Assembly (NCBI GenBank): GCA_002269645.1
Contig: NIVC01005260.1
Location: forward strand, 1-15,129
Direction of reading: 5' to 3'
Length of the DNA stretch: 15,129 bases
Origin: Macrostomum lignano
Lineage: Eukaryota
How positions within the stretch are numbered: the first letter of the stretch is position 1; each line of letters begins with the position of its first letter. The notes below the pieces were generated by a model. That model made no database searches. It was not told the origin of the DNA and saw only the letters and a list, made by a program, of their open reading frames with translations. This document shows, in pieces, positions 1-15,129 of the stretch. A program made the position numbers and the translations under genes.

Positions 1-47
1 TCGGAACAGGCGGAAAGAAGCTAATCGAGATGGTTGCTTTGCTTCGA
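1..47 (-). CDS. Cav1: Cav1 exon start, IVS4 (truncated by the window edge)
   Basis: ATTTCAG acceptor. Reads (S)[14 protein letters not shown] after removing one extra base near 43-44 and one near 12-16. Confidence 0.85.
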
Positions 48-319
48 CTGAAATTCATGGATTGAGCAGTTGTCCCTTTGTCAGCGAGTTCAAGCTCGAG
101 ACTTTAATTGTCAAGTCACAGAAAGAATCTTCAACGCCAAACTAACAAAAATCAAGTGGAAGTACAACACGTACGTTGTTACCGTAAAAACTCGAAATTA
201 AAATATGAAATTAGCTAAAAAATATTCTTTTTGTTTTATCTAGATTCCTCCAATGGACGTTTTGCTGAACTTTGAAAATCTACTTTCAACGTTTGATTCC
301 GGCACATTAACTTGGGGGG

Positions 320-399
<80 letters not shown>

Positions 400-485
400 C
401 ACCTCCAATCTCAGGCACTGACACTGTGAAAAGGACTGAATAAGTCAATTTTTTTTTGAGTAGCCGATATTTCGAAATTAAGCCT

Positions 486-566
<81 letters not shown>

Positions 567-843
567 GAGAGAGAGGGAGGAGAGAGGGAGAGAGAGAGGG
601 AGAGAGAGGGAGAGAGAGGGAGAGAGGGAGAGAGGGAGAGAGAGAGAGGGAGAGAGAGGGAGAGGGAGAGAGAGAGGAGAGAGGGAGAGAGGGAGAGAGG
701 GAGAGGAGAGAGGGGGGAGAGAGAGAGGGGGAGAGAGAGAGGGAGAGGGAGAGAGGAGAGAGAGGAGGGAGAGAGGGAGAGAGGGAGAGAGAGAGGGAGA
801 GAGAGAGAGAGGGGGAGAGAGAGAGAGAGGGAGAGAGAGAGGA

Positions 844-886
<43 letters not shown>

Positions 887-3800
887 TAGCGCAAAAAGAC
901 CGACTGTATGGTTTACTGGAGTTTGGGCCATAGACAACAAAGCTTCAAACAGGCCTGGGGATTAAGAGGGCAGAAAGGAAGGAGATGTGGAGAGAGACAG
1001 AGAATACAACGTGAATTGTTACATTCCATTAACAATGGAGAACCAGAGCTCCATCGTGCAAGAAACAGTGAATGTGTCTGGTGGTTTTCAGGTGAATGTT
1101 CGGTGTATTGTTTATTATGAACAACTGTACTTTTAACAGTTGCAATCTGTGATGAGGTTTACGGTCACTTAATTTTAAGCAGTGCCCAAAGATGGTTCCT
1201 TTCAGACTTCCTGAGAGGAACTAATAGTACCTATCAAAACAAACAGAATGGATCGTCAGGTGCATTTCTAGTATAATTAATACAAAAGTACATTTACTAG
1301 TGAAAGGGTGCTTCAATAATAAGGAATATAAAATGAAACAAAAGTTCACAACGCTTAAAAAGCTTCCAAAAATCCTCCTCAGTTCCAAAGCAGCTCAGTT
1401 TGGCAACAACCCAGCTTTTTGCGCAGTCAAAAATGACAAATATGGATTTGACAGTTGGTCGGCAAATAGCGTACATGCGTGTGGGCGTGTTTCTCAGCAT
1501 CAAGTGGCGGCTGCACAGGCTCTGGAACGCTATTTGCTTGCTGTATGATCGTATTAAAGGAGAGAGAGACAAGTTGTAGTTAGTAGGGCTGGTTAGACAG
1601 TTTTGCATGTAAAAAAATTGGGTAAATAATTACTTGTCCATATAGATGGACAGCTGAAGCAAAAAGGAGCTGCATTTTCAGATCGTAAAAATTGTTAACA
1701 CACTATAGAGATGTGACCACCTGTAATATAAGCTCGATAAACTTTTTGTAATCATCCATACAGAAAATACATACTTGAAACTTATTTTAAAATTGTTCGT
1801 TTTTAAGCTTAGTGATCCATTCAATACACCCAGAAGTATTATTGCTCTCTTCCACCAGTAAATAAATCACTCACTCAGTAAATAAATAAATAAAACAGTC
1901 ATATCGATTTATTGTACAACAGCTTACCACAATTTTGCTGGATATGATGTCGATATAAGACCCCAGCACGATGACGAAATCTAGCACGTTCCATAGGTCG
2001 CTGAAGTAGTTCTAAAATGTGAGAATAGGAGCCTCGCTATAAATTAACACATCATGATATTGGAGCACTAAACGTTGCTCGCAGGGGCGTCGGCACCGGG
2101 GGGACAGAGGGGACAGGACCCCCGAGTAAAAGCTTTGTCCCCCCACCCAACCTTGTGACCCGTTATGTAAATCAATAGTTTTGCTTCAGGGTGCTTGCGG
2201 CGCTAGAATGAGTGCTGGTGGCGCTAGAATGAGTGCTTGCGGCGCTAGAATGAGTGCTTGCGGCGCTAGAATGAGTGCTTGCGGCGCTAGAATGAGTGCT
2301 GGCGGCGCTAGAATGAGTGTTTGCGGCGCTAGAATGAGTGCTTGCGGCGCTAGAATGAGTGCTTGCGGCGCTAGAATGAGTGCTTGCGGCGCTAGAATGA
2401 GTGCTTGCGGCGCTAGAATGAGTGCTTGCGGCGCTAGAATGAGTGCTTGCGGCGCTAGAATGAGTGCCTGCAGTGCCAAAATATCTGCTGCGCTAAATGT
2501 GCGCTGACAACACAGATCATGTACATGTAAAGTAGAATTCTTGGCTGTGTCTACCCGACCATAAAATTTATGCCGACGCCCCTGTTCTCACCGAGAAGAA
2601 ATTAAGAAGGTAACAAATAAACAAAAATCAGTGATGTTGGTTAAGGTAGAGGTCACGAGGACGTGACCCGCGTCACTGAGAAAAACAGGTTGACAATATT
2701 ACAGCACCAATCACACTGCATGAGGTGGCTATGGATTAGCAGAGGGCTGGAGCACTAGCTTGACCTGCATGTATGCTCTACTTACCCTAAAGCTAAATGC
2801 CACCAGCTTCAAAATGAACTCGATGGTGAAGATGGCGGTGAAGAGCATGTTGAAATAGTCAAGCACCGAGCTGTACGTTTCAGGCTGGCCTTCAAACTGC
2901 AATGATTGACATATGAACTCGTGTGAAAAATTTGAATAGAAATTATTAGCCTGGAATACAAATATACAAAGAAAGTAAGACACAAAGAGTCGAGCGACAT
3001 AGCAAATGTATAGTGGCCCTTCCACACCAAAAATAAGTCTGTAACAAAAAACCAAAATTGCACAACTTCGAAGAAAACTTGTCTTCTTAACGGCAAAATG
3101 GTCCTCCCTAGGTAAAGCCACTTCCCTAGGTCGTATGAAGCGACTTCCCTAGGTCGTATAAAGCGACCTCCCTAGGTCGTATGAAGCGACTTCCCTAGGT
3201 CGTATAAAGCGACCTCCCTAGGTCGTATGAAGCGACCTCTCAATGTATATAAAGCGACTTCCCTAGGTCGTATGAAGCGACCTCCCTAGGTCGTATGAAG
3301 CGACCTCTCAATGTATATAAAGCGACTTCCCAAGGTCGTATGAAGCGACCTCCCTATGTATATAAAGCCACTTCCCTAGGTCGAATGAAGCCACTTCCCT
3401 AGGTCGTATAAAGCGACCTCCCTAGGTCGCATATGAAGCAACTTTCACGACTAGATGTGGGCACCCAAAGAGCTTTTCATGCACTATTTATTCACTTCAA
3501 AAAAAGAATTTTATGAAACCGAGAGAAACATGACAGCAGGTAATATATGGAGGCTTCAGATAGGAAGTTAACCGGTACTAACCTTCATAGCCAGCGCAAT
3601 CGTGTTGAGCATGATCAGCAGAAAAATTCCGTATTCGAATGGCGTCGAGGTGACAAACCACCAGATCTTGTACTGCAACCGTCGTTGCGGTATGTAGCGC
3701 CGCACTGGCTTGGCTTTTAACGCAAATTCGATGCACTTTCGCTGCATAAGAAAGAAGGAAGATCGGGATAATAAATTTAGGGTGTACTACTTGCATTAGC

Positions 3801-6800
3801 ACGCAAAACAAGTGTACGCTGGTGTGTACTCGTACGGATATTGAGAAATCAGTCTGCTAATACATAATACATACTTGATTTTTATGGAAATTTTTAATTT
3901 TGAAGAGTCAAGCTCGTACTGAAGGTCGTTAAATAATTTTCTCTTTTGTTTAGCTAACATGTACTTACTATTATAGTAACTAAAAACGTATATTTCAAAG
4001 CAACATTCATACTGATTGTACAAAAAGAAAAGAGCATGTGAGCAAAGTAAAAAAGTGAAATAATTGTTAACCAATTGCGATTTGACACAATAAATTTGAG
4101 CTGTGAGTAACGATTGTTGCTTCTAAAAGCAGTCTCACTGACACAAAACAACAATCTAAGGTGATCCAGTCGATCAAGTGCCAACACTTTGCAAAAGGAA
4201 CCTGACATACTTTGTACTACATGTGTTGTCGACCCTGTGAATTGGTCGGTCGGTCTGAACTGGATAAAGGAATGTAAAATGAGAAGCGCATGGAGCTGCA
4301 GGGGACGGCGACTTGGCGCAGATTAGCGGGGAACGAACCAATTTAATCCGGGGACCAACTGAGATCCGCACGCCCGACCCGAAAATCCAATCCCCATGCA
4401 GTTAGGAGCCTCATCGACCATTAAGGTTGGCGAATTAAATGTACTATTGCTCCACCGAGAGAGACTGGAATGAATTTTTGTCAAAGTACTTTTACCGTTC
4501 GATAGTTTTTAAGTCTGACAAAAAATATCGGTGTTCAATTATGAACAGAACTACAAGGGTAAATTTACCAGCCCTTGAATTGCACAGAAACAGCTATAGC
4601 TACAGATATTTATGCTCGAACAAGAGTAAAGGGCTCTGCAAACTTCTGCGGAACATCACTACAACACTAGCCTAGTATCACAAGAGCAAGAAAAAATACT
4701 GATTTCCTAAATACATAAATTTGGCCAACAGATGTCATTCGTGTCTCATATCAGCCTCTCCTCGTTTGGCGGCCGGAGAATGTCCTGCATGCTTTGCTGT
4801 CCCGACTTGCCGCTGCCCAGCTCCCGATCGCTGGGCTTATAAACGCCTGTGTCCTTTCGTCGGTCGCGTATCACTTTAAAAGCTAAGCCAGCTGCAGTTC
4901 CGGCTAGCAGAACAAGTAGCAAACCCACTACTAGGCCGACTACCAGACGACTGTCTGCGGCTGGAGCCTGAGTTCCAGCCTCCACAGGCTCCGTTGTCTG
5001 AGCAGTCTGTGGCATCGTTGTCAGAGGCGGAGTCGTCGTTTGCAGAGTCGTCGCTAGCGGAGTCGTCGCTGGCGGAGTCGTCGCTGGCGGAGTCGAACAG
5101 TTGGCGCCGCTGTAACCGTCGGTACAGTTACAGGAGAAAGTCTCCAACGAAGCGATGCTAGTGCAGAATCCGTGCCCTGAGCAGGGCTCCAGGCCGATCG
5201 TGCTTGTGTTGCAGAAATCTCTAGCCTTTAAGCAAAAGTCGCCCCCGTAGCCGGTAGCGGTGCAGTTGCAGCTCGAGTGGAGGTTCCACTGAAGCCGGGG
5301 CAAGCAGCTGCCCCCGTTTGCACAGATGCAGGGGTCCTCATGGCAGCCAGCCAAAACACCGGAGCCATTCAATAGCTGCACATTCGTCACCTCGGCAATG
5401 GCATTATCCGAGGACTCAGTGACCGTCGCATTGGCAAGGCAACCTCTTAGTCCGTCGGTGCCATTAGTACCACCAAAGGTCATCACAGTCCAGTTGAATA
5501 TCGCCGTTAATGCTGTCGTCGGATCTGCAAATACACGTAGCAGTTCAGCTCCATCCAAGCTGACAGTCACGTCGCTAGCATTGGCATCGAGTCTGATGCT
5601 GACAGAGTGCCAGTATCCGTCAGTAAGATTAACAGCAGCTTGGTTGCGACTGCCATTCGAAGGCCAATCAGCAGTCAGATGCTGGAAAGTTATGCCGAGG
5701 ACCAGTTGCAGCATGCTGTTGGTTTCATTGTCCGTCGACGGTGCGTACAAGCCCCAGATGGACCAAGCCGGGTGTGACGCTCGAAACTCGAATGTTGCGA
5801 CAGTTTCAATCGGGATTGCCGAAGCATTTTGGCGCGTCAGATTTGCAACGCCACTGACGTTAAATGTTGCGACATCGGCCGAAGCATTGGAAATTGGCTG
5901 TGTAACCAGAAACAGCACGCCGAAGCAGAAATACAGAAAAAATCGTTGAAGAAACATGCTTCTGCGCCTAACAATTCAACCGAAGCAAAAAAAGTCGTCA
6001 GAGCTATAGTTGCACGAAACAGTTGTTACGAATCTATCGCTTCAGTAGGCCGTAGTTGAGGTAAGCTATATAATCGCTTTCAAACTTGCTCGTTTACTCT
6101 CATGCTTAATTAGACGCAGGCTGAAGCATAATAATAGCTGCAATAGCCACGAAGTTCCACGAGTGTCGTATGTCAGCACGGGCACGATAGAGAGTAGTAG
6201 TAGTACGTCTCTAGTCACGGAGGAAATGCGCCACACTGGTCGCCTTTTATAAGGTACGCTCGCCGTGGCCTTTCTCGCGAACAGCTAGCTGCTTTCCTTT
6301 GTATACACTTCTCTGTATACTCACTATAGCAGCCTGGCCTTCTCTCCAGACACTCACTAATGCAGGGCAGAACTGACTGGACGGATTTGGCGAGCGAATC
6401 TCTCTTGCCAAAAGTTCTGTTGGTCATGCAGTACTCATGTCGTTTTTTCTTAATGCTTCTTTTTATTTTCACTCCTGCTTCGCAGAGAACACGGCCCACA
6501 GGGAAAGTTTTCTCTCGTTTTAGCTCATGTAAAATCGTTTTTATATCGGGCTGACGGACGCGGTCGATTGGGCTGAGTTAGCTGAGCAGAGCCGGGAGGT
6601 AGGGCTGAGAAGCTTTATGGGTAGAGAAAGGGAGTTGGCCTGGAGGGTTATTGGATGAAAGAACTGCAGCTTAGGGCGTGGAGATGTATGAGCTCATTCG
6701 CTTTCCTCCACTCTCTCCTGCCCTAACCGTCTCACCTGCTGAGCACATCCAGATGGTTTCTGTCAGACTTAACTGCGCACGACAATAGGCTCTATAATTT

Positions 6801-9800
6801 CGCGGGGAGTGCTCGTTTCTCACCCTCAGGCCAGCGTGCATGGTCGCTTGGCGTGCATACATGAGCATACATACGGAATGAGGCGCTTTGCATTCAGTGG
6901 CAGACTGAACTTGAGTAAGCAAATGATAGAAGAGATAATTATTTTCAGTGAAAAGGATGACAGTTTTCTGTTGCAACCACTGCCTATTCTTTACTCCTTA
7001 ATATCTGTATAATATGACATTAAGTAATTAAAGCTATCAAGCAAGATAAGGAGTCAGAGGCAAGCACGAGGGACTGTCAAAACAGTTGTGCATATACACG
7101 ATAATGCAGACACGTTATTAGGAGGTGGGGCAGCTATGTACATGAATGGGGCAGTGGGGCTTCACCGCATTTTAACTGCTTTAACCCGTGCCCTAATTTA
7201 ACAGCGCACATGTATAAACATTCTTGCTTGCCTAGATTGACTAAGGGACTGGAGAGTGGCATAATTTTAACCATTGTCAATTATAGAAGCTTGTCTAGCA
7301 GATGTATCAAAGTCGAAGCCTTCTGAGGCAGCGCTCGCTACTTCAACGATCGCTATGCACAGCAAAGTCGGGCACCCCAAACGGTCGATTCGACTGCGCA
7401 GTGATCGGTGCCGGACACAACGGCCTGGTGGCTGCCGCCTACTTGGCTGGCGCTGGTAAGAAAGTCTGCGTACTTGAACGGCGTCATGTGATCGGTGGCG
7501 CTGCCGTAACTGAAGAGATCGTGCCCGGGTTCAAGTTCAGCCGCTGCTCCTACGTGCTGAGCCTGCTGCGCCGAAGGTGATGGAAGACCTTCAGCTAGAA
7601 CGGCATGGCTTGGTCGTGTACACTCGCGACCCCAGCTCCTATACGCCTCTACTGGAGCCCGGGTCGAAAACTGGAGCTCAGTCACTTCTACTGGGCCGCG
7701 ACCACGCGCGGACGCACAGGTCCATCGCCGCATTTTCGCCTCGCGACGCCGACCAGTTTGTCCGCTACGAAGAGCAGATGGGCCGCCTGGCAGCCAGTCT
7801 GGAGCCGCTGCTCGATAACCCGCCGTTCAACTTGCACCACCTGCTGGCATCAAGCGGACTTCGCGCGAAAGCAAGGGAACTCGAACGGGCTAGACCGCTT
7901 TACCGGATGGCGTCTCAGCTCGGACCGCAGCTGCTGCAGCTCTACGAGCTGCTCACTGCGCCAACTTCTCGAATTCTGGATCGCTGGTTCGAGAGCGAGC
8001 CTTTGAAGGCCACTCTGGCCACGGACAGCGTCATCGGAGCAATGATTTCGCCGGACACGCCTGGCAGCGGCTACGTACTACTGCATCACGTGATGGGCGG
8101 AGTGAACAATATCCCAGGAGCATGGGGCTTTGTCCACGGCGGTATGGGATCTGTTAGCAAAGCTATTGCCGAAAGTGCTCAAGCAAGAGGTATGAAACTA
8201 CAGGAACCAATTGCTATTAACGAGTAAACTTTGAAGCTCAATTTGATTTAAAACGCTTAAATCGTTTCTCCTCAGGTGCCAAGATATTCACCGATGCTCC
8301 GGTCTCTCATATCAAAGTAGTAAATGGCAAAACAGAAGGCGTTGTTCTTGCCGACGGCAGCGAAGTAGATGCGCCCGTGGTGTTGTCGAACGCCACGCCG
8401 AAGGTGACGTTCGAAAACCTGCTGCCGCCAGACTCTCTGCCCGAGGACGATTTTCTGGCCAGCGTACGGCGAATCGACTACGCCTCGCCAGTGACGAAAA
8501 TCAACGTGGCCGTTTCCCGACTGCCAAACTTTCTCGCCGATCCCAATCCGGTGTCGGGCGACTGCCCGGACCATTTTCACGGCACCATTCACCTCAACTC
8601 CGACAGCTGCGCCATGATTGATACGGCCTACCGGGCCTGTCAGCAGGGCGGCTACGCTGATAGGCCGGTCATCGAGATGACTGTGCCCTCGTCGCTTGAC
8701 GATAGTCTAGCTCCAAAAGGTACGCGGAAGATTGAGCATTTCTATACTAATATACTGCAGGTCTGGCTGGTTGACTGTCTCCAGAACTTGTTCTAGAAGC
8801 GTCCCAGAGGACTGTGCAAGAGAAGTTAGGCTTATCTGAAACGCCTCCCAAATGATTCAACACTGCTCATAGTTGACTTTATGAACCATGGAAACCACGT
8901 TTTCAATTAGCTTTTAATGCGTCTTCTCTCTGTAGGGGGTTTACCGGATAATCCTCGTCCTAATTACCAATAGGTGCACACGTGGTCCAGCTATTTACTC
9001 AGTACACACCAAAGCTGCTGCATGGCAAGCGGTGGACGCAGGAGGACAAGGACCGCTACACCAGGACCGTGTTCAAATGCATCGACGACTACGCGCCCGG
9101 TTTCTCCGCCTCGGTTGTTGGCAGCGACGTGCTGACTCCGCAGGACCTAGAAGAGACATTCGGTCTCACCGGAGGCAACATCTTCCACGGCGGGATGTCG
9201 CTTGACCAGCTTTACTTCATGCGGCCAACCCCCGAGTACTGCGACTATCGCAGTCCGATCGGCGGCCTCTACCTGTGCGGCAGCGGGGCTCACCCTGGTG
9301 GCGGCGTCATGGGTGCACCTGGACGGCTGTGCGCTTTGGAAGTGCTCAGAGACAGCTAAATGATGATCACTATTGAAGCCATTCATTTTGAATTCAATAG
9401 TTTCCTCTATTATTGAACCTCTATTTCTATTGGAATGGATTTTTTCGGTAATTATAGCAATATTTAGAATTATTCTATTTTTCAATAAGCAGATGTTAGA
9501 ATTCGAAATTTATTTAATAATACATTTTAATAATCACTATACGAACGTAGAAGCAGTCTCAAAAATCCTTGTCTGAAATCGGTAATATTTTTATAGCTGA
9601 TCCTGTAGGGTCAATACCAAACTACATCATAAGAATCAGCTGTTCTTGTCTTCAAAATGAATCAGTGAATGAATGTACCTTATCAGCCTAAAAATAAATC
9701 ATACAAAACAACAGGTCTGCAATGACGCAGACTACAGTTCTTTCTTCTCAGCAGCGTCCTCGCTGTCAGGCTGCTTGGCGGCCTTCTTCGCCGCTTCGTC

Positions 9801-12400
9801 GGTGCCTTGAAGCGTCGGCAGCTCGTCGTACTCGCCCGGCTTGTGCGCCGCCTCGCAGGCGGAGTTGCACCGGGCGAACTCCTCTGCCAGCTCGTGCTCG
9901 CTGACGCACTCGCGCCGGCAAACCTGCAGCTTGCTGAGCCGCTTTGCGCGCATGATTTCTTGGAAAGCCTCCTCGGCTTCGGCGCGCAGCTTCGGATCCT
10001 CCGTGTTCATCAGCATCATGCGGTCGATCTCAGGGCCGGCCTTGGGGTCCTTTTTCATGAAGTCCATGTTGACGTCATCGGCGTCCGGGTAGAAGGCCAG
10101 AGCTGGAAGCGACAGCTGCGTGAGCAGCACCAGCAGCACCGGGAGGGTTTCTCTTCTAAAAGCCGGCTGCATTTCCAAGACAGACGGGTATATCAAACTT
10201 TCAAATCGGGTAGCTCGCATGTTGGACCGGTTTTCAGCATTTTTATACCGGCTTGCCAGCTGATCTCAGTGTCCAATTGCAACGCGACCCGTCATGCCAC
10301 ATCAACACAGAGCAGGTGCGCCGTTCGATAGGAGAACTTTGGGACATTTAGTTTTCCCAATTGCAGTCTGTTCAAACACGCTGGTTCTCTATTTGATTTC
10401 AGTTGCTTCGATTCTGTCACAATCCAGCGCATTGTTCAACCATAAAGGTAAACACACGCCGATTGTGTTTAAACAGTTCACTTCGTATTACTTGACATTG
10501 AGCGAGAGTTATTTATGCAAGCCACCCATAGTCCATAGGGATTTCAAGCTGCCAGATTTTAAGCAGAGCCACCATTGACTTAGAAGCCTTAGCGCTCGAT
10601 AATATCAGCATTTTCCAAGTCAATTTTTTCGATTTTCTAACTCAGTATACTTGAAAACATCTGTTTCCAGGACTTTGATAAGCAATTCGGCGCTCACGAT
10701 TTATACTAATAGCTTCCTCAAAATGTATGTTTAGTCTTCTACATAATGTGCAGCCAGTTCTTCATATCATCTACAAAGCCGCTCCCCATTTCGGTTGGGC
10801 TGGATAGGCTTTTCATAGCGGCCATAGTCTATTGCCAGCCTTGCCGGACTGGAGGGGCTTTTCATAGCGGCCATAGTCTATGGCCAGCCTTGCCGGACTG
10901 GAGGGGCTTTTCATAGCGGCCATAGTCTAAGGCCAGCCTTGCCGGGCGTGGAGCTATTTATAGAACTCTATGTTCGGCAAGGAACGGAGTTTTTTATTGC
11001 TTCGGCGCGAAGAACAAAAAAACGACGCGGGCTAATAACTAACCATGGAAAAACTGCTCACCTGATTCTTGTCCAACTCGCAATTCCTGTACTCTTGCTC
11101 GCCCTCCTGTTGAAAGGTGACAATGACAAAGCCAACGAAGATGTTGACCATAAAGAAGGCGATCACGATGATGAAAGCGACGTAAAACAGCGCCATTGGG
11201 GGCCGATTGTTGTAGGTGCCACCCTGGCCTCCTTATCTGAGTCGATGACATGTACAACAGCCTGCAGTAGATAGAGAGAAATTAGTTTTCTTAATGCTCT
11301 ACTGTCAGTAGCTCGTAGGCTTGTAGGATGAAAAAAGTAATATAGAACTCTACTAACCCGGGCCAGCCCTCGAATGTGGAGGTGGCAAATAGAGACAGCA
11401 TGGCGTGAGCCACGTCATCAAAATTGAGATCCTCATTCTCCCATTCTCTCTCCTTCATCACGGGCTTGGAGATGTCGTTGTCTTTGTAGAAAATGAAGTA
11501 GCCCTGGCACTCTGCTTCCGTAGACTTGGATCCGTCGTTGCACTTTCTGAACTTGCCCTTGAACAGCTGAACACCGATGACGGCGAACATGAACTCGAGC
11601 AGGAAGGTGACCAGCATGATGTTGCCGATGCTCTTCACCGCTACGATCACGCATTGTACGACGTGCTGCGGATTGGGGATTGCAGATTGGGGTTTTGCTG
11701 CTTTTAGAAGAATGCAGGGAGGGGTCGCAAACCTCAACCAAGCTGGAAGGGTAACATACAGTTTAGAAATTGTTTCACAAAGTCCCGTTTTGTCGTGAGT
11801 TTGAATTTGAACTTTTTTTTAGCAATTGCGAGTTTAATAGCGCGATTACTCAGCCTCACCTTGAGCCCCTTGGCCCTGTTGATGGCGCGCAGCGGCCGCA
11901 ACACTCGCAGAACTCGAAGAATTTTCACGACCGAAAACGTGTCCGAACTGAAAATTGAAGTACGAGATGAATTTATCAATACGTGAGACACAAGTTCACT
12001 TTTTTTAATTTAAAATCTTTTTAAAAGTACATTATGCACACGCTTTGAACTTTAGAATGCATCAGGTAGCTAAAGCATCTACCTGTGACTATGCAAAAAC
12101 TGCTGCAAACAAGAACGGATCAAAATTTCCGCCACCACAGGCTAAAAACGTTTGATTTGATTTCTGCTCAGTTCACGAAATTGCAATCGCTGGCAATTCT
12201 TCATGTAACACTTTTTCTCTCATTCACTGGCAAAGCAAACAAAGGTGTATAGCATTCCGAAGTCCACAGCTTTGAGAACTGCGGTGCACTCACGGCGAGA
12301 ATAGGGACATTAAAGCTACAGACACAACCAGCAGGTCCAACAGGTTGAATGTGGACCTGCAGAAGGAGCCTTTGTGCAGGATCACACCGTAAGTGACCAC
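1..12400 (-). CDS. Cav1: Partial multi-exon gene for L-type voltage-gated calcium channel alpha-1 subunit (Cav1; CACNA1C/D-like), repeat III to IVS4; runs off both window edges
   Basis: Exons join at GT-AG sites to give [28 protein letters not shown]...[28 protein letters not shown]...TFEGWPG...[16 protein letters not shown]...[18 protein letters not shown]...[18 protein letters not shown]...ISISFFRLFR. These are Cav1-type IIIS3-IVS4 motifs. Four 1-nt indels must be corrected to keep the frame. Confidence 0.97.
322..392. repeat. (GA)n microsatellite flanked by G-runs
   Basis: Direct reading. Confidence 0.97.
486..881. repeat. Imperfect (GA)n / GGA polypurine tract, about 400 nt
   Basis: Essentially only G and A; pure (GA)n ends with a G-enriched core. 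Confidence 0.97.
1475..1540 (-). CDS. Candidate in-frame cassette exon (66 nt, [22 protein letters not shown]) in the Cav1 IVS3-S4 linker
   Basis: TACTAAC branch point, CT-rich tract and TACAG acceptor; CAT|GTACGC donor (same hexamer as the PYROXD2 donor at 8720); phase 0/0 with no stop codon. No transcript evidence is available. Confidence 0.5.
1928..2011 (-). CDS. Cav1: Cav1 exon (84 nt), IVS3
   Basis: TTTTAG|AAC acceptor and GTG|GTAAGC donor; [28 protein letters not shown]. Confidence 0.95.
2082..2584. mobile_element. MITE-like non-autonomous DNA transposon (503 bp) with perfect 14-bp terminal inverted repeats
   Basis: CAGGGGCGTCGGCA (2082-2095) and TGCCGACGCCCCTG (2571-2584); no coding capacity; no intact TSD found. 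Confidence 0.7.
2191..2467. repeat. 21-bp minisatellite, 13 copies (GTGCTTGCGGCGCTAGAATGA)
   Basis: Near-identical units; explains the ACGARMS and ALILAPQ repeat ORFs. Confidence 0.97.
2786..2896 (-). CDS. Cav1: Cav1 exon (111 nt), IVS2
   Basis: TTGCAG|TTT acceptor and AGG|GTAAGT donor; [37 protein letters not shown]. Confidence 0.96.
3103..3440. repeat. 22-24 bp minisatellite, about 14 copies plus a partial one (CTTCCCTAGGTCGTATGAAGCGA)
   Basis: Direct reading; variant unit CCTCTCAATGTATATAAAGCGA recurs at 3236 and 3304. Confidence 0.95.
3583..3741 (-). CDS. Cav1: Cav1 exon (159 nt), III-IV linker and IVS1
   Basis: TGCAG|CGA acceptor and AAG|GTTAGT donor; [53 protein letters not shown]; not shown in the supplied ORF track. 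Confidence 0.96.
4746..5957 (-). CDS. crb: Intronless short Crumbs-family type I membrane protein, 403 aa (signal peptide, 1 LamG, 2 EGF, Thr/Pro stalk, TM, Crumbs cytoplasmic tail)
   Basis: Hydrophobic N-terminus. LamG motifs [11 protein letters not shown] and GLRGCL. EGF cores CANGGSC...[13 protein letters not shown] and CSGHGFC...[37 protein letters not shown]. Tail GVYKPSDRE...[11 protein letters not shown] matches the Crumbs FERM-binding GxYxPS..E and PDZ-binding ERLI motifs. Confidence 0.9.
   Translation of the reverse strand: MFLQRFFLYFCFGVLFLVTQPISNASADVATFNVSGVANLTRQNASAIPIETVATFEFRASHPAWSIWGLYAPSTDNETNSMLQLVLGITFQHLTADWPSNGSRNQAAVNLTDGYWHSVSIRLDANASDVTVSLDGAELLRVFADPTTALTAIFNWTVMTFGGTNGTDGLRGCLANATVTESSDNAIAEVTNVQLLNGSGVLAGCHEDPCICANGGSCLPRLQWNLHSSCNCTATGYGGDFCLKARDFCNTSTIGLEPCSGHGFCTSIASLETFSCNCTDGYSGANCSTPPATTPPATTPLATTLQTTTPPLTTMPQTAQTTEPVEAGTQAPAADSRLVVGLVVGLLLVLLAGTAAGLAFKVIRDRRKDTGVYKPSDRELGSGKSGQQSMQDILRPPNEERLI
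6244..6251 (-). promoter_or_regulatory. Putative TATA box of the mini-Crumbs gene
   Basis: Minus-strand TATAAAAG with an Inr-like CATTTCC about 24 nt downstream; about 290 nt upstream of the ATG. Confidence 0.35.
7302..9359 (+). CDS. PYROXD2: Pyridine nucleotide-disulfide oxidoreductase domain-containing protein 2 (FAD-dependent, phytoene desaturase-like fold), about 572 aa; join(7302..8189,8276..8719,8974..9359)
   Basis: [15 protein letters not shown] dinucleotide-binding motif, [70 protein letters not shown]. Two phase-1 GT-AG introns (8190-8275, 8720-8973). One missing C at about 7571 (LLR-PKVMED). Arg-rich N-terminus without acidic residues suggests mitochondrial targeting. Confidence 0.95.
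9509..9514 (-). promoter_or_regulatory. Putative polyadenylation signal (AATAAA) for the KKEL gene
   Basis: Plus-strand TTTATT, about 220 nt past the stop at 9732. Confidence 0.4.
9693..9698 (+). promoter_or_regulatory. Putative polyadenylation signal (AATAAA) for PYROXD2
   Basis: First canonical plus-strand AATAAA seen after the stop at 9359. Confidence 0.35.
9732..10172 (-). CDS. Intronless orphan secretory-pathway protein (146 aa from ATG 10172; 162 aa from ATG 10220) with signal peptide, twin CX3C motif and C-terminal KKEL
   Basis: GC-rich coding-like ORF flanked by AT-rich DNA. Signal-like [35 protein letters not shown]-x12-CNSAC, ends EKKEL-stop. TATA box upstream and AATAAA downstream on the same strand. 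Confidence 0.75.
   Translation of the reverse strand: MQPAFRRETLPVLLVLLTQLSLPALAFYPDADDVNMDFMKKDPKAGPEIDRMMLMNTEDPKLRAEAEEAFQEIMRAKRLSKLQVCRRECVSEHELAEEFARCNSACEAAHKPGEYDELPTLQGTDEAAKKAAKQPDSEDAAEKKEL
10240..10247 (-). promoter_or_regulatory. Putative TATA box of the KKEL gene
   Basis: Minus-strand GGTATAAAAATG. Standard spacing puts the start site near 10220, favouring ATG 10172 as the start codon. Confidence 0.45.
10807..10953. repeat. 49-bp tandem repeat, 3 copies
   Basis: GGCTTTTCATAGCGGCCATAGTCTA... starts at 10807, 10856 and 10905. Confidence 0.93.
11062..11261 (-). CDS. Cav1: Cav1 exon, IIIS6 and start of III-IV linker (200 nt as written; 202 needed for frame)
   Basis: CTGCAG acceptor and CAG|GTGAGC donor. 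Reads LLYMS / IDSDKE / [56 protein letters not shown] across three frames, implying 1-nt deletions near 11247 and 11229. Confidence 0.93.
11358..11665 (-). CDS. Cav1: Cav1 exon (308 nt), IIIS5 and pore loop including the selectivity-filter Glu
   Basis: CCGCAG|CAC acceptor and GG|GTTAGT donor; [39 protein letters not shown]...[10 protein letters not shown]. Confidence 0.97.
11860..11947 (-). CDS. Cav1: Cav1 exon (88 nt), IIIS4 voltage sensor
   Basis: TTTTCAG acceptor and AAG|GTGAGG donor; [29 protein letters not shown]; phase 2 to 0. Confidence 0.97.
12294..12400 (-). CDS. Cav1: Cav1 exon (107 nt), IIIS2-S3 linker and IIIS3
   Basis: CAG|GTG acceptor and CC|GTGAGT donor; translates [35 protein letters not shown](P); phase 0 to 2. 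Confidence 0.95.
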
Positions 12401-12708
12401 CTGTGCATTGTATTGTGCATTTGGTTGTATCAATAGTTGTTAGATGGCTAACTATACTAAACTCAATAATGTAGCTACTCAACAAACTAATAAAGAAACA
12501 AAAGTAATTATTAAACATAATAATTTATCACTAGGCACAAAAAGGACGACATAGATTGAACAAAATTGAGTGCATAAGTAATGTAATGTTTAGCGAAAAT
12601 GTGGGTTACATGTAGGTTAATGATGACTAAAAAATAATATGTTACTTTACACCAACCTGTGACCTTAGTTTAAAATTAATTAGAAACAAAAATGTCCTCA
12701 GGCTAGAC

Positions 12709-14567
12709 ATGGGATTCGTCAGACTAGAATTGAGATTCCTGAGCCTATAGAGTTAGGATTCTAGATTGTAGTCTAGACTAGATTGTAGTCTCGAGTTGGG
12801 ATTCCTCAGACTGGAATTGGATTCCTGAGACTATAGAGTTGAGATTCTAGATTGTAGTCTAGACTAGATTGTAGTCTCGACTAGATTGTAGTCTCGAGTT
12901 GGGATTCCTCAGACTGGAATTGGGATTCCTGAGACTATAGAGTTGAGATTCTAGATTGTAGTCTAGACTAGATTGTAGTCTCGACTAGATTGTAGTCTCG
13001 AGTTGGGATTCCTCAGACTGGAATTGGGATTCCTGAGACTATAGAGTTGAGATTCTAGATTGTAGTCTAGACTAGATTGTAGTCTCGACTAGATTGTAGT
13101 CTCGAGTTGGGATTCCTCAGACTGGAATTGGGATTCCTGAGACTATAGAGTTGAGATTCTAGATTGTAGTCTAGACTAGATTGTAGTCTCGACTAGATTG
13201 TAGTCTCGAGTTGGGATTCCTCAGACTGGAATTGGATTCCTGAGACTATAGAGTTGAGATTCTAGATTGTAGTCTAGACTAGATTGTAGTCTCGACTAGA
13301 TTGTAGTCTCGAGTTGGGATTCCTCAGACTGGAATTGGGATTCCTGAGACTATAGAGTTGAGATTCTAGATTGTAGTCTCGACTAGATTGTAGTCTCGAG
13401 TTGGGATTCCTCAGACTGGAATTGGATTCCTGAGACTATAGAGTTAGGATTCTAGATTGTAGTCTAGACTAGATTGTAGTCTCGAGTTGGGATTCCTCAG
13501 ACTGGAATTGGGATTCCTGAGACTATAGAGTTGAGATTCTAGATTGTAGTCTAGACTAGATTGTAGTCTCGACTAGATTGTAGTCTCGAGTTGGGATTCC
13601 TCAGACTGGAATTGGGATTCCTGAGACTATAGAGTTGAGATTCTAGATTGTAGTCTAGACTAGATTGTAGTCTCGACTAGATTGTAGTCTCGAGTTGGGA
13701 TTCCTCAGACTGGAATTGGGATTCCTGAGACTATAGAGTTGAGATTCTAGATTGTAGTCTAGACTAGATTGTAGTCTCGACTAGATTGTAGTCTCGAGTT
13801 GGGATTCCTCAGACTGGAATTGGGATTCCTGAGACTATAGAGTTGAGATTCTAGATTGTAGTCTAGACTAGATTGTAGTCTCGACTAGATTGTAGTCTCG
13901 AGTTGGGATTCCTCAGACTGGAATTGGATTCCTGAGACTATAGAGTTGAGATTCTAGATTGTAGTCTAGACTAGATTGTAGTCTCGACTAGATTGTAGTC
14001 TCGAGTTGGGATTCCTCAGACTGGAATTGGGATTCCTGAGACTATAGAGTTGAGATTCTAGATTGTAGTCTAGAACTAGATTGTAGTCTCGACTAGATTG
14101 TAGTCTCGAGTTGGGATTCCTCAGACTGGAATTGGGATTCCTGAGACTATAGAGTTGAGATTCTAGATTGTAGTCTCGACTAGATTGTAGTCTCGAGTTG
14201 GGATTCCTCAGACTGGAATTGGGATCCTGAGACTATAGAGTGAGATTCTAGATTGTAGTCTAGACTAGATTGTAGTCTCGACTAGATTGTAGTCTCGAGT
14301 TGGGATTCCTCAGACTGGAATTGGGATTCCTGAGACTATAGAGTTGAGATTCTAGATTGTAGTCTCGACTAGATTGTAGTCTCGAGTTGGGATTCCTCAG
14401 ACTGGAATTGGGATTCCTGAGACTATAGAGTTGAGATTCTAGATTGTAGTCTCGACTAGATTGTAGTCTCGAGTTGGATTCCTCAGACTGGAATTGGGAT
14501 TCCTGAGACTATAGAGTTAGGATTCTAGATTGTAGTCTAGCCTAGATTGTAGTCTCGAGTTGGGATT
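12709..14567. repeat. Composite satellite array, about 19 units of 104 bp (87-bp variants)
   Basis: Unit = GTTGGGATTCCTCAGACTGGA + ATTGGGATTCCTGAGACTATAGA + GTTGAGATT + 2-3 copies of the 17-mer CTAGATTGTAGTCT(A/C)GA. Confidence 0.97.
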
Positions 14568-14938
14568 TTTTTATTATTTTATTAGAGGCAGCGGGGTTGT
14601 GTGCACCCTGGCGCACTTTAAAGCGACATAGGCACACAACCGGCGAGAGGCATTACTGCCCATTTCCGCCGACTCCCCTGAGCAGGCATACAAGCGCGCG
14701 GATACGTACGCAGGCACACACTCACACAGGAGTGACAGCGGCACTAACTTTATATTATCGTTAGGCACATGTACACTTCACTGCGCCTTGGGGGGTTGGC
14801 TCTCAAGGCCGTTAATTGCACGAGCAGAGCCAAGCCGAGATTCCAATTCAGCCCCAAATTAATGTGACTGCACTTGGAATCGAGCCTGGGTCGCTGGCAC
14901 AACAGAGCAGCTGCGCTACCGCTGGGCTACGGCCCCCC
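14568..14938 (-). mobile_element. tRNA-derived SINE (about 370 bp) inserted into the satellite
   Basis: Minus-strand box A TAGCCCAGCGG (14919-14929), box B GGCTCGATTCC (14876-14886), A-rich tail AATAAAATAATAAAAAAA. 15-bp TSD TCT(C/A)GAGTTGGGATT at 14553-14567 and 14940-14954 with one mismatch. Confidence 0.85.
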
Positions 14939-14939
14939 T

Positions 14940-15129
14940 TCTAGAGTTGGGATTCCTCAGACTGGAATTGGAATTCCTGAGACTATAGAGTGGGATTCTA
15001 GATTGTAGTCTAGACTAGATTGTAGTCTAGAGTTGGGATTCCCCAGACTGGAGTTGGGAATTCCCCAGACTGGAGTTGGGATTCCCAGACTGGAGTTGGA
15101 TTCCCCAGACTGGAGTTGGGATTCCCAGA
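14940..15129. repeat. Continuation of the satellite, changing to a simpler ~20-22 bp unit (GATTCCCCAGACTGGAGTTGG)
   Basis: Satellite register resumes after the TSD; the simpler unit repeats from about 15036 to the window end. Confidence 0.93.

What the first reader, a model, noticed from the sequence alone, without database searches (positions are those of the whole stretch)
3742..11061. Three complete genes nested in one Cav1 intron, two on the host strand
Seen: the phase-0 intron between ...ELDKNQ and RKCIEFALK... is 7,320 nt, whereas the other complete Cav1 introns here are under 2 kb. It contains mini-Crumbs (-), PYROXD2 (+) and the KKEL orphan (-) in a divergent-then-convergent layout. 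Known: nested genes are usually single and antisense to the host. Inference: an unusual compact nested cluster; I know of no Cav1 gene described with this content. Any functional link (e.g. co-expression in polarised sensory or photoreceptor cells) is speculative.
Basis: partly seen in the sequence, partly recalled or inferred. Interest (0 to 1): 0.75.

Follow-up and report, generated by a model that had tools for sequence, protein, structure and literature searches.

The report
Three genes nested in flatworm Cav1 intron
In the flatworm Macrostomum lignano, one 7.3-kb intron of an L-type calcium-channel gene really does hold three separate genes; this is an ordinary nested-gene arrangement already in the public annotation, but one of the three, a small Crumbs-type polarity gene, sits in the same intron in distantly related flukes.

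Summary
The window is the whole contig NIVC01005260.1 of the Macrostomum lignano Mlig_3_7 assembly. A Cav1 (L-type) alpha-1 gene lies on the minus strand. Its phase-0 GT-AG intron between ...ELDKNQ and RKCIEF... spans 3742-11061 (7,320 nt); the other six introns are 96-1,880 nt.

The intron holds three genes:
- a single-exon Crumbs-like gene on the host strand;
- a three-exon PYROXD2 gene, antisense to the host;
- a single-exon orphan ending in KKEL, on the host strand.

Two other contigs (L002, L011) span the whole intron in the same order, so this is not a misassembly. The RNA-seq-based public annotation of L002 already shows the three genes inside a 1,973-aa Cav1 model.

The window's five frameshifts are homopolymer indel errors. 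The contig is also a mosaic of two near-identical copies.

The layout follows known nested-gene rules: the same-strand guests are intronless, the antisense guest has introns, and the host intron is the longest. That makes it a new member of a known kind.

One new point: an 86-88-aa Crumbs-type gene sits on the host strand, 191-192 nt upstream of the same Cav1 exon, in two trematodes. The Crumbs-in-Cav1 nest therefore appears ancient in flatworms. PYROXD2 and the orphan were found in this intron only in Macrostomum. No functional link is shown.

The parts
12294..12400 (-). Cav1 exon a (domain III S2-S3: [36 protein letters not shown])
   Evidence: identical exon in L002/L003
11860..11947 (-). 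Cav1 exon b (III S4: [29 protein letters not shown])
11358..11665 (-). Cav1 exon c (III S5 and pore loop, includes TFEGWP)
11062..11261 (-). Cav1 exon d (III S6, ends ...NCELDKNQ). The window lacks two bases here, both homopolymer errors: ATGTC[C]ATC and GAGG[G]CC
3742..11061 (-). Host intron, 7,320 nt, phase 0, GT-AG
   Evidence: An equivalent intron of about 7.3 kb is present in L002 and L011
9732..10220 (-). Single-exon orphan gene on the host strand. It has a signal peptide, a twin CX3C motif (C101/C105, C118/C122) and a C-terminal KKEL. The annotated product is 162 aa; the start is probably the Met at 10172. A TATAAAA lies at 10247-10241
   Evidence: No homologue among 1.84 billion representatives, no Pfam hit, low-confidence helical model
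9360..9731 (.). Tail-to-tail spacer between PYROXD2 and the orphan. AATAAA lies at 9693 (+) and at 9514-9509 (-), which would give overlapping 3'UTRs (inferred)
7302..8189 (+). PYROXD2 exon 1. The window lacks one C near 7572 (CGCC[C]GAAG), which truncates the annotated product of this contig to 479 aa
8276..8719 (+). PYROXD2 exon 2
8974..9359 (+). PYROXD2 exon 3, including the stop codon
   Evidence: The intact 572-aa product in L002 is named PYROXD2 by UniRef
5958..7301 (.). Head-to-head spacer between the Crumbs-like gene and PYROXD2. Presumed promoter region. It is among the most diverged segments between copies (3.1% substitutions plus many indels)
4746..5957 (-). Single-exon Crumbs-like gene on the host strand, 403 aa. 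Domain order: signal peptide, laminin-G-like domain, 2 EGF-like domains, Thr/Pro-rich stalk, TM segment, Crumbs tail (...[13 protein letters not shown]...RPPNEERLI)
3742..4745 (-). 1,004-nt spacer from the Crumbs-like stop codon to the next Cav1 exon. It must contain the guest's 3'UTR and poly(A) site (ATTAAA on the minus strand at 4347-4342)
3583..3741 (-). Cav1 exon e (III-IV linker and IV S1: [53 protein letters not shown])
2786..2896 (-). Cav1 exon f (IV S1-S2)
1928..2011 (-). Cav1 exon g (IV S3)
1..47 (-). Cav1 exon h (start of IV S4, [15 protein letters not shown] in the other copies). It is cut by the window edge and carries two indel errors
10800..10953 (.). 49-bp tandem repeat, 3 copies, inside the host intron

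Best explanation
This is a genuine nested-gene cluster in Macrostomum lignano. One intron of the Cav1 (L-type) calcium-channel alpha-1 gene lies in the linker between domain III S6 and domain IV S1. It has become the home of three independent protein-coding transcription units.

In the host's direction of transcription the order is:
- a lineage-restricted secretory-pathway orphan ending in KKEL (same strand, intronless);
- PYROXD2, an FAD oxidoreductase (antisense, two introns);
- a short Crumbs-family polarity protein (same strand, intronless), which lies closest to the 3' splice site.

How it works is mostly inferred.
- Cav1 pre-mRNA synthesis reads through all three guests, and the whole 7.3-kb segment is removed as one intron.
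- Each guest is transcribed on its own. The RNA-seq-based annotation gives each a separate transcription-unit name.
- The two same-strand guests tolerate the position because they have no internal splice sites that could mis-splice with Cav1 exons. The antisense guest can keep its introns.

History, also inferred: the Crumbs-type guest is old. It is shared with trematodes in the same intron, on the same strand and at the same 3'-proximal position. PYROXD2 and the orphan were later Macrostomum-lineage additions to an already enlarged intron.

No functional coupling between the host and its guests is shown.
For: Identity of the window. It is 100% identical to contig NIVC01005260.1 of GCA_002269645.1, which is M. 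lignano Mlig_3_7.

Cav1 host.
- The model scores 655 bits to human Cav1.2 and 498 bits to Cav2.2, collinear across the junction.
- Pfam Ion_trans hits at 4e-72.

Independent assemblies.
- L002 (a 253-kb contig) and L011 (a 685-kb contig) span the whole intron with Cav1 exons on both sides and the three guests in the same order and orientation.
- L001 and L003 each cover one side.

Transcript-level support.
- The Mlig_3_7 annotation is built from RNA-seq, trans-splice-site and poly(A)-site data (PMC5730564).
- In L002 it has a 1,973-aa Cav1 product. Its gene range covers the whole 20.5-kb locus and its product carries the C-terminal GPHH and IQ domains. The 162-aa, 572-aa and 408-aa products are listed as separate genes inside that range.
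- Locus tags: BOX15_Mlig007680 (Crumbs-like), BOX15_Mlig017006 (PYROXD2) and BOX15_Mlig032429 (KKEL orphan).

The frameshifts are errors. All five are homopolymer indels absent from the other copies.

Identity of the guests.
- Crumbs-like: the only PDB hit of the tail is the Drosophila Crumbs tail 4WSI/4YL8, aligned to the last residue. EGF passes the Pfam cutoff. LamG is just under the cutoff, and there is a neurexin LNS-EGF hit.
- PYROXD2: UniRef name, FAD-binding Pfam families and a CrtI-like best PDB hit.
- KKEL orphan: no homologue at all.

Constraint. Between the two copy types, the Crumbs-like and PYROXD2 coding sequences differ by 0.9-1.2%. The flanking spacers differ by 3.1-3.9%.

Deep conservation of the Crumbs guest.
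- In Paragonimus skrjabini miyazakii the homologous 11.6-kb Cav1 intron carries, on the host strand, an ORF with a TM segment and the tail ...RSQRTDHGVYQPN...KVPPEERLI*. It lies 192 nt before the RKCIEF exon (tblastn E=1e-6).
- A second, fairly distant trematode-like contig (Logan SRR31920576) has the same ORF 191 nt before the same exon. The ORFs are 58% identical in protein while the spacer is not alignable.

Fit to known rules: see PMC3814207.
Against: - I saw no read-level or cDNA-level evidence for the exact 11062->3741 junction. No M. lignano Cav1 transcript was returned by the protein search. Support comes from collinearity with Cav1.2 and from the annotated gene range.
- Independent promoters for the guests are inferred, not shown. 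In a species where 39% of genes are SL trans-spliced, the same-strand guests could instead be cut out of host-promoter transcripts.
- The window itself is a mosaic, error-laden contig, and contig NIVC01000282.1 ends inside the intron.
- The trematode link rests on about 85 residues, of which the TM segment is compositionally biased.
- The guest is absent from the orthologous intron of the cestode Mesocestoides. It is also absent from the second flatworm Cav1 paralogue and from a bryozoan Cav1. The nest is therefore not universal.
Confidence: 0.88

Rival explanations
1. Operon-like coupling. The two same-strand guests, or at least the Crumbs-type one, are not autonomous. They are produced from Cav1-promoter primary transcripts by SL trans-splicing at an acceptor just upstream of their ATG, plus intronic polyadenylation. 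Each transcript would then yield either full-length Cav1 mRNA or a guest mRNA, which links calcium-channel and polarity-gene output.
For: - M. lignano trans-splices 38.8% of its genes, and about 7% of assembled transcripts are multi-gene precursors (PMC5730564).
- A pyrimidine-rich tract followed by AG lies 7-13 nt upstream of the guest ATG in all three species: window ...ttgaattgttag|gcgcagaagcATG at about 5968, L008 ...acgtttccag|gttgaaaATG, and L005 ...tttttgtactccgcaag|ctaaaacatcagcATG.
- In both trematodes a complete ATG-stop-AATAAA unit is packed into the last 460 nt or so of the intron. The stop-to-exon spacing is 191 and 192 nt.
- Strand and position have been kept since the split between Macrostomorpha and trematodes.
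Against: - The annotation gives each guest its own transcription-unit prefix rather than cutting it out of the Cav1 unit.
- A TATAAAA lies 20 nt upstream of the orphan's first ATG, which suggests an own promoter at least for that gene.
- An AG near an ATG is weak evidence.
- I examined no SL-containing reads.
- Nested pairs generally show uncorrelated expression.
Confidence: 0.1
2. Assembly artefact. The two Cav1 halves and the three genes are joined only by collapse or chimerism of near-identical copies in a neopolyploid, repeat-rich genome. The real Cav1 intron would be short.
For: - The window is a 15-kb leftover contig that switches between two copy types and has many indel errors.
- Contigs NIVC01000282.1 and NIVC01003770.1 end inside the intron.
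- M. lignano is a known neopolyploid that is difficult to assemble (PMC10733133, abstract seen).
Against: - Two long contigs of 253 kb and 685 kb, which represent different copy types, carry the same collinear arrangement across the whole intron.
- The RNA-based Cav1 gene model spans it.
- An older, independent gene model (MetaClust P0126) fuses the Cav1 N-terminal part, the orphan and the Crumbs-like sequence in the same order.
- Trematode genomes show the Crumbs-type ORF in the same intron.
Confidence: 0.02

Closest known systems
Nested (intronic) protein-coding genes of metazoans, as surveyed in Drosophila (Lee & Chang 2013, PMC3814207) and mammals (PMC11694760)
   Same: - Guests lie wholly inside one long host intron.
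- The host is a long, conserved, many-intron neuronal/muscle gene.
- Same-strand guests are single-exon and the antisense guest has introns.
- One guest is a young orphan.
- There is no evident functional relation between host and guests.
   Different: - Three guests share one intron, and two of the three are on the host strand, whereas the majority of nested genes in flies are antisense.
- One host-guest pair appears to be conserved across a very deep split within flatworms. For comparison, only about 25-31% of pairs are shared even between human and mouse.
Human NF1 intron 27b with EVI2A, EVI2B and OMG (recalled from memory, not tested here)
   Same: Three small protein-coding genes are embedded in a single intron of a large host gene.
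   Different: In NF1 all three guests are antisense to the host. Here two are sense.
Crumbs family, especially the short vertebrate CRB3
   Same: - Single-pass membrane protein.
- The roughly 37-40-residue cytoplasmic tail has a juxtamembrane basic/G-x-Y-x-P FERM-binding-type motif and a C-terminal ERLI PDZ-binding motif.
- The Macrostomum protein also has the LamG and EGF module types found in long Crumbs proteins.
- The trematode 86-88-aa version has almost no ectodomain, like CRB3.
   Different: - The Macrostomum protein has one LamG-like and two EGF-like modules, against about 3-4 LamG and 19-30 EGF in CRB1/Drosophila Crumbs (numbers from memory).
- The FERM-type motif reads GVY/GKY rather than GTY.
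- The trematode ORF has no cleavable signal peptide.
- Binding to Pals1/Stardust or Moesin is untested.
SL trans-spliced polycistronic units of flatworms and nematodes
   Same: Same-strand genes lie close together in a species with abundant trans-splicing. An AG acceptor-like site lies just upstream of the guest ATG.
   Different: In an operon the genes lie in tandem. Here the candidate downstream genes lie inside an intron of the upstream gene, and the annotation treats them as separate units. No SL reads were examined.

Membership tests
Nested (intronic) gene / host gene pair | Guest gene lies entirely within one intron of the host, with no exon overlap | tested here: met
   All three CDSs lie within 4746-10220, inside intron 3742-11061. 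The flanking host exons were mapped. The same layout is seen in L002 and L011.
Nested (intronic) gene / host gene pair | Host exons on both sides are joined in one mature transcript | tested here: inconclusive
   Indirect support only. The model is collinear and gap-free against Cav1.2 across the junction. The RNA-seq-derived 1,973-aa Cav1 model has a gene range that covers the whole 20.5-kb locus and carries the C-terminal GPHH and IQ domains. I did not see a transcript sequence across the junction.
Nested (intronic) gene / host gene pair | Guest is an independent transcription unit | tested here: inconclusive
   Each guest has a separate transcription-unit name in an annotation based on RNA-seq, SL sites and poly(A) sites. 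A TATAAAA lies upstream of the orphan, and poly(A) signals lie downstream of each CDS. No TSS data were seen.
Cav1 (L-type) voltage-gated calcium channel alpha-1 | Closer to Cav1 than to Cav2/Cav3/Nav over the domain III-IV core | tested here: met
   Scores are 655 bits (Cav1.2), 646 (Cav1.3) and 637 (Cav1.1), against 498 (Cav2.2), 369 (Cav3.2) and 316 (Nav).
Cav1 (L-type) voltage-gated calcium channel alpha-1 | Domain III pore-loop glutamate of the EEEE selectivity filter (T-x-E-x-W) | tested here: met
   TFEGWP is present in exon c. Only domain III is within the window.
Cav1 (L-type) voltage-gated calcium channel alpha-1 | Four-domain architecture with C-terminal GPHH/IQ region | tested here: met
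   This is not visible in the window itself. The annotated product at the sister locus L002 carries Ion_trans repeats, GPHH and Ca_chan_IQ.
Crumbs family | C-terminal ERLI PDZ-binding motif at the very end of a short cytoplasmic tail | tested here: met
   The protein ends ...RPPNEERLI followed by a stop codon. It aligns end to end with the Drosophila Crumbs tail, which is the only PDB hit at E<=10.
Crumbs family | Juxtamembrane FERM-binding motif (basic residues followed by G-T-Y-x-P-S) | tested here: met
   [13 protein letters not shown] aligns with RNKRATRGTYSPS. The difference is T to V.
Crumbs family | Ectodomain built of EGF-like and laminin-G modules | tested here: met
   Pfam EGF scores 28.2 bits, above the 21.5 cutoff. 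Laminin_G_2 scores 20.5 bits, just below the 22.9 cutoff. A neurexin-1 LNS-EGF region hits at E=2e-4. There are far fewer modules than in long Crumbs proteins.
Crumbs family | Binds Pals1/Stardust PDZ and FERM proteins; apical localisation | not testable with these tools
   Needs biochemistry or imaging.
PYROXD2 | N-terminal FAD-binding Rossmann fold (GxGxxG) and a CrtI/amine-oxidase-like body | tested here: met
   GAGHNG is present. Pfam hits: NAD_binding_8 at 3e-11, DAO at 1e-13, Amino_oxidase at 2e-12. The best PDB hit is phytoene dehydrogenase 4DGK at 2e-19.
PYROXD2 | Orthology to animal PYROXD2 (reciprocal best hit or phylogeny) | not tested
   Only the UniRef name of the identical M. lignano protein is available ('Pyridine nucleotide-disulfide oxidoreductase domain-containing protein 2'). 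I also recall long identical motifs shared with human PYROXD2, but that is memory, not a test.
KDEL-type soluble ER-resident proteins | Cleavable N-terminal signal peptide | tested here: inconclusive
   From Met17 the sequence [26 protein letters not shown]|FYPD looks like a signal peptide by eye. No predictor was available.
KDEL-type soluble ER-resident proteins | C-terminal [KRHQSA]-[DENQ]-E-L (PROSITE PS00014, recalled from memory) | tested here: not met
   The C-terminus is K-K-E-L. Lys at position -3 is outside the classical pattern, so ER retrieval is only a possibility.
Small Tim / twin-CX3C proteins | Twin CX3C on a helix-loop-helix, and membership of the Pfam zf-Tim10_DDP family | tested here: not met
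   The motif is present (CRREC, 12 residues, CNSAC) on a predicted helical hairpin with pLDDT 72-84. There is no Pfam hit and no homologue. The signal peptide also argues against a mitochondrial intermembrane-space protein.

The most novel reading that the evidence does not exclude
The pairing of Crumbs and Cav1 is an ancient, selectively maintained host-guest unit of rhabditophoran flatworms. A short Crumbs-family gene has stayed on the host strand at the 3' end of the domain III-IV linker intron of one Cav1 paralogue since before Macrostomorpha and Neodermata split. It has stayed there because its expression is mechanistically tied to host transcription. SL trans-splicing plus intronic polyadenylation would compete with Cav1 splicing, giving a built-in switch between channel mRNA and polarity-protein mRNA.
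Probability: 0.1. Interest if true: 0.7.

Novelty: new member of a known kind. Interest (0 to 1): 0.3.

Why it matters
As a nested-gene cluster, this is a clean textbook-style example. Sense guests are intronless, the antisense guest has introns, and the host intron is enlarged. The organism has transgenesis, so transcriptional interference between a host and its guests could be tested there.

The more useful result is comparative. A Crumbs-type gene occupies the same Cav1 intron in Macrostomum and in trematodes, which gives two things:
- a deep microsynteny marker for assigning orthology among the duplicated flatworm Cav1 genes; Cav channels are studied as ion-channel drug targets in parasitic flatworms;
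- an unannotated 86-88-aa CRB3-like gene in fluke genomes that gene finders miss.

The analysis also flags NIVC01005260.1 as an error-laden mosaic contig. Its PYROXD2 model (479 aa, BOX15_Mlig017006g4) is truncated by a sequencing error, not by biology.

Tried and rejected
- Pseudogene reading of the frameshifts. Rejected: all five are single-base homopolymer differences that the other copies lack.
- Transcript proof of the junction. The protein search with the spliced Cav1 model returned no M. lignano sequence at all, not even the annotated 1,973-aa protein. It is therefore uninformative rather than negative.
- Word-based homology search with the Crumbs-like protein. It found only its own 90% cluster. 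A two-sequence profile of the tails found one more protein, P0127.
- Full HMMER search with the KKEL orphan. It found only itself. The AlphaFold model is low confidence (pLDDT 59.5), so I did not run a fold search.
- Alternative terminal exon of Cav1. I considered whether the trematode Crumbs-type ORF is one. Rejected: the nearest acceptor is out of frame with the phase-0 donor and hits a stop at once. In Macrostomum the guest has its own start codon and signal peptide.
- PYROXD2 or the orphan in other Cav1 introns. I searched Paragonimus, Mesocestoides, Hymenolepis, P. kellicotti and Bugula and found nothing.
- The Lottia hit turned out to be Cav2-like. The tick locus was too long to fetch.
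- KKEL constraint between copies. The coding sequence has 0 differences, but so does the whole right half of the locus, introns included. No inference is possible.
- Gene IDs in the literature or in supplements. None were found.
- Rfam and tRNA scans of the window. Both were empty.
Full report
WHAT THE WINDOW IS

The 403-aa ORF at 4746-5957 (-) occurs exactly in GenBank assembly GCA_002269645.1. Papers identify that assembly as Macrostomum lignano Mlig_3_7. A look-up of the 162-aa ORF returned a 15,129-bp contig, NIVC01005260.1, which is 100% identical to the window in reverse orientation. The window is therefore a complete small contig of a PacBio-based assembly of a free-living, neopolyploid flatworm.

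CHECK OF THE OBSERVATION

Six-frame translation and splice-site mapping give a Cav channel gene on the minus strand.

| Cav1 exon | Window coordinates |
|---|---|
| a | 12294-12400 |
| b | 11860-11947 |
| c | 11358-11665 |
| d | 11062-11261 |
| e | 3583-3741 |
| f | 2786-2896 |
| g | 1928-2011 |
| h | 1-47 |

- The introns are 346, 194, 96, 7,320, 686, 774 and 1,880 nt.
- The 7,320-nt intron (3742-11061) is GT-AG and phase 0.
- The spliced 353-aa model aligns collinearly with human Cav1.2 residues 866-1214. It scores 655 bits, against 498 for Cav2.2 and 369 for Cav3.2. The Cav1 call and the exon joins are sound.

The three guests are at the stated places and strands:

| Guest | CDS coordinates | Strand | Exons | Product |
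|---|---|---|---|---|
| Crumbs-like | 4746-5957 | - (host strand) | 1 | 403 aa |
| PYROXD2 | 7302-8189, 8276-8719, 8974-9359 | + (antisense) | 3 | 572 aa |
| KKEL orphan | 9732-10220 | - (host strand) | 1 | 162 aa |

The Crumbs-like gene and PYROXD2 are head to head, 1,344 nt apart. PYROXD2 and the KKEL gene are tail to tail, 372 nt apart.

QUALITY OF THE CONTIG

To read Cav1 exon d, exon h and PYROXD2 exon 1 in frame, I had to assume five single-base indels. Four other contigs of the same assembly carry this locus:

| Locus | Contig | Window coverage | Identity |
|---|---|---|---|
| L001 | NIVC01000282.1 | 1-10558 | 99.5% |
| L002 | NIVC01001668.1 | 3871-13494 in the longest alignment; exons e-g also found | 97.3% |
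| L003 | NIVC01003770.1 | 4550-15129 | 98.3% |
| L011 | NIVC01000309.1 | 173-13747 | 97.1% |

- All of them have the extra or missing homopolymer base exactly where I predicted it. The frameshifts are sequencing errors, not pseudogenisation.
- The annotated 479-aa PYROXD2 product of this contig (BOX15_Mlig017006g4) is truncated by one of these errors. The other copies give 572 aa.
- A substitution profile shows that the window has no substitutions against L001 over about 1-9000. It has none against L002/L003 from about 8500 to its end at 15129.
- The two copy types differ by 1-4% over about 3900-8500 and are identical to the right of about 8500.
- The window is therefore a haplotype-switch or recombinant leftover contig.

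- L002 lies inside a 253-kb contig. L011 lies at the start of a 685-kb contig and carries the Crumbs-like protein of the other copy type.
- Each of them carries Cav1 exons g-f-e, the Crumbs-like gene, PYROXD2, the orphan, and then Cav1 exons d-c-b-a. The order is the same and the intron is about 7.3 kb.
- An older chimeric gene model in MetaClust (P0126) strings the Cav1 N-terminal part, the orphan and the Crumbs-like sequence together in the same order.
- The arrangement is real.

TRANSCRIPT SUPPORT

The Mlig_3_7 annotation was built from genome-guided RNA-seq assembly. Gene ends were set by spliced-leader reads and poly(A)-site reads (PMC5730564).
- At L002 it lists a 1,973-aa Cav1 product. 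Its gene range covers the whole 20.5-kb locus. It carries GPHH and IQ domains, which are encoded downstream of the nest.
- Inside that range it lists the 162-aa, 572-aa and 408-aa products as separate genes.
- The three guests carry different transcription-unit prefixes: Mlig032429, Mlig017006 and Mlig007680.

This is good indirect evidence for the host junction and for separate guest transcripts. I did not see a transcript sequence across the junction. The homology search with the Cav1 model returned no M. lignano protein at all, which reflects a limit of that search rather than absence.

WHAT THE GUESTS ARE

(i) Crumbs-like gene.
- The domain order is: signal-peptide-like N-terminus; a heavily N-glycosylatable laminin-G-like domain; two EGF-like domains; a Thr/Pro-rich stalk; one TM segment; and a tail of about 40 residues.
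- The laminin-G call rests on Pfam Laminin_G_2 at 20.5 bits, just under the cutoff, and on a neurexin LNS-EGF hit at E=2e-4.
- One EGF-like domain passes the Pfam cutoff.
- The only PDB sequence that matches the tail at E<=10 is the Drosophila Crumbs tail (4WSI/4YL8), aligned to the last residue. [13 protein letters not shown]...[10 protein letters not shown] aligns with RNKRATRGTYSPS...LKPPPEERLI.
- 'Mini-Crumbs' is a fair name.

(ii) PYROXD2.
- It has FAD-binding Rossmann families and a CrtI-like body.
- UniRef names the identical M. lignano protein PYROXD2.
- I did not run a formal orthology test.

(iii) The orphan.
- It has no Pfam family and no homologue at E<=0.001 among 1.84 billion representatives.
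- It has a twin CX3C motif (C101/C105, C118/C122) on a predicted helix-loop-helix. That hairpin is the only moderately confident part of a poor model.
- A TATAAAA lies at 10247-10241, 20 nt upstream of the first ATG. This suggests that translation starts at Met17 (10172), which exposes a signal-peptide-like sequence.
- KKEL falls outside the classical [KRHQSA][DENQ]EL pattern (recalled from memory). ER retention is only a possibility.

COMPARATIVE RESULT

I fetched the genomic loci of Cav1 homologues returned.

Where a Crumbs-type guest is present:
- Paragonimus skrjabini miyazakii (L005). The homologous intron runs from ...NCELDKNQ at 31374 to the RKCIEF exon at 43001, about 11.6 kb.
  - tblastn with the Macrostomum Crumbs-like protein hits the host strand at 42560-42805 (E=1e-6).
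  - The ORF reads MDNSTTTPVSQAAAGLTNGQMAAAIVVPIIVLAILAVGGYFLYRWLRSQRTDHGVYQPNAMETQGKEFAQPDPQSVIKVPPEERLI*.
  - An AATAAA follows 63 nt after the stop, and the Cav1 exon starts 192 nt after the stop.
- Logan contig of run SRR31920576 (L008). A profile of the two tails retrieved one further protein from 5.8 billion, P0127 (88 aa, E=8e-22).
  - Its 967-nt contig carries the ORF at 351-617.
  - An AATAAA follows about 80 nt after the stop, and the Cav1 RKCIEF exon starts 191 nt after the stop.
  - The two trematode ORFs are 58% identical in protein. The Cav1 exons are 80% identical in DNA. The spacer between ORF and exon does not align. This is the pattern expected of a conserved coding gene.

In Macrostomum the Crumbs-like gene is likewise the guest nearest the 3' splice site, on the host strand, 1,004 nt from the exon.

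Where the guest is absent:
- the orthologous 2.15-kb intron of the cestode Mesocestoides (L007);
- the second flatworm Cav1 paralogue, whose intron at this position is short (about 195 nt in P. kellicotti L010; also short in Hymenolepis L006);
- the bryozoan Bugula, where the intron is about 290 nt (L012).

PYROXD2 and the orphan were found in none of these loci.

The most economical reading has three parts:
- A short Crumbs-family gene was already nested in this intron of one Cav1 paralogue before Macrostomorpha and Neodermata diverged.
- It was lost or moved in at least one cestode.
- PYROXD2 and the orphan joined later in the Macrostomum lineage.

I found no paper that mentions this.

HOW IT LIKELY WORKS

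What is shown is the anatomy, the replication across contigs, and the separate annotated transcripts. The rest is inference.
- Cav1 transcription reads through the guests and removes them with the intron.
- The guests use their own promoters, located in the head-to-head spacer 5958-7301 and at the TATA box near 10245.
- Poly(A) signals lie at 9693 (+), 9514-9509 (-) and 4347-4342 (-).

The layout matches rules derived in Drosophila (PMC3814207):
- 71% of nested genes are antisense.
- 72.5% of same-strand nested genes are single-exon, against 37% of antisense ones. This is attributed to selection against mis-splicing with the host.
- Introns that hold guests are long, with a median of 4.8 kb against 138 nt for other introns.
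- Host and guest are usually not co-expressed.

Mammalian data also show that nesting is common and that orientation is only mildly biased (PMC11694760). Here both sense guests are intronless and the antisense guest has two introns. The locus is an orderly example, not an exception.

RIVAL WORTH KEEPING

M. lignano trans-splices about 39% of its genes, and about 7% of assembled transcripts are multi-gene precursors. In all three species a pyrimidine tract followed by AG lies 7-13 nt upstream of the Crumbs-type ATG. The sense guests might therefore be cut out of host-promoter transcripts by SL trans-splicing plus intronic polyadenylation, at the expense of Cav1 mRNA.

The separate transcription-unit names and the TATA box argue against this. 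No SL reads were examined. I give it about 10%.

VERDICT

The interpretation as 'unusual' is not.
- This is a new, well-documented member of a known kind (nested genes). It is already present in a public annotation, although apparently undiscussed.
- The one modest new finding is that the Crumbs-in-Cav1 nest is shared with trematodes.
- A functional link remains speculative.
- Interest: 0.3.

Noticed in passing
L002:5701-5802 and L011:13794-13895 (outside the window, upstream of window exon a at 12294-12400): A second version of the Cav1 domain III S2 exon ([34 protein letters not shown]) is 62% identical to exon a. The two are probably mutually exclusive exons separated by the 104-bp satellite. 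The old chimeric model P0126 wrongly includes both in tandem.
   Followed up: partly
window 12700-14567 and 14950-15129: A large 104/87-bp satellite array, built from a 17-bp CTAGATTGTAGTCTCGA sub-repeat, lies inside the Cav1 intron upstream of exon a. It is interrupted at about 14570-14945 by a GC-rich repeat that also occurs at L001:15453-15762 (82% identity). No tRNA or Rfam match was found.
   Followed up: partly
window 322-392 and 486-881; 2191-2471; 3113-3444; 10800-10953: Other tandem repeats lie in Cav1 introns: a degenerate GA microsatellite of about 400 bp, a 21-bp repeat (13 copies), a 23/68-bp repeat (14 copies) and a 49-bp repeat (3 copies).
   Followed up: no
window 8500-15129 versus 3871-8500: The two copy types of the locus (L001-like and L002/L003-like) differ by 1-4% over the left part. 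They are identical, introns included, to the right of about 8500. This suggests recent gene conversion or recombination between copies in this neopolyploid, or a collapsed assembly.
   Followed up: partly
L005:42548-42808 and L008:351-617: An unannotated 86-88-aa CRB3-like 'micro-Crumbs' gene is present in two trematodes. It has a short N-glycosylatable N-terminus, no signal peptide, a TM segment and a Crumbs tail ending EERLI. The stop-to-Cav1-exon spacing is nearly identical (192 and 191 nt), and an AATAAA lies 63-80 nt after the stop.
   Followed up: partly
window 9360-9731: The candidate poly(A) signals of the convergent PYROXD2 (AATAAA at 9693, +) and orphan (AATAAA at 9514-9509, -) genes would make their 3'UTRs overlap tail to tail by about 185 nt.
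   Followed up: no
window 9732-10220 (-): The orphan protein has a twin CX3C motif (CRREC, 12 residues, CNSAC) of the kind seen in small Tim proteins. It combines this with a signal-peptide-like N-terminus and a C-terminal KKEL, and it has no detectable homologue anywhere.
   Followed up: partly
proteins P0005, P0006, P0019, P0027, P0028, P0040: A group of unidentified Logan/ENA contigs encodes Cav1 fragments with a similar ...RRLQYKVWWFITSQGFEY... signature. The stretch from domain III to ...FAFRFK reads as a single continuous ORF, apparently without the intron studied here. The organisms are unknown.
   Followed up: no
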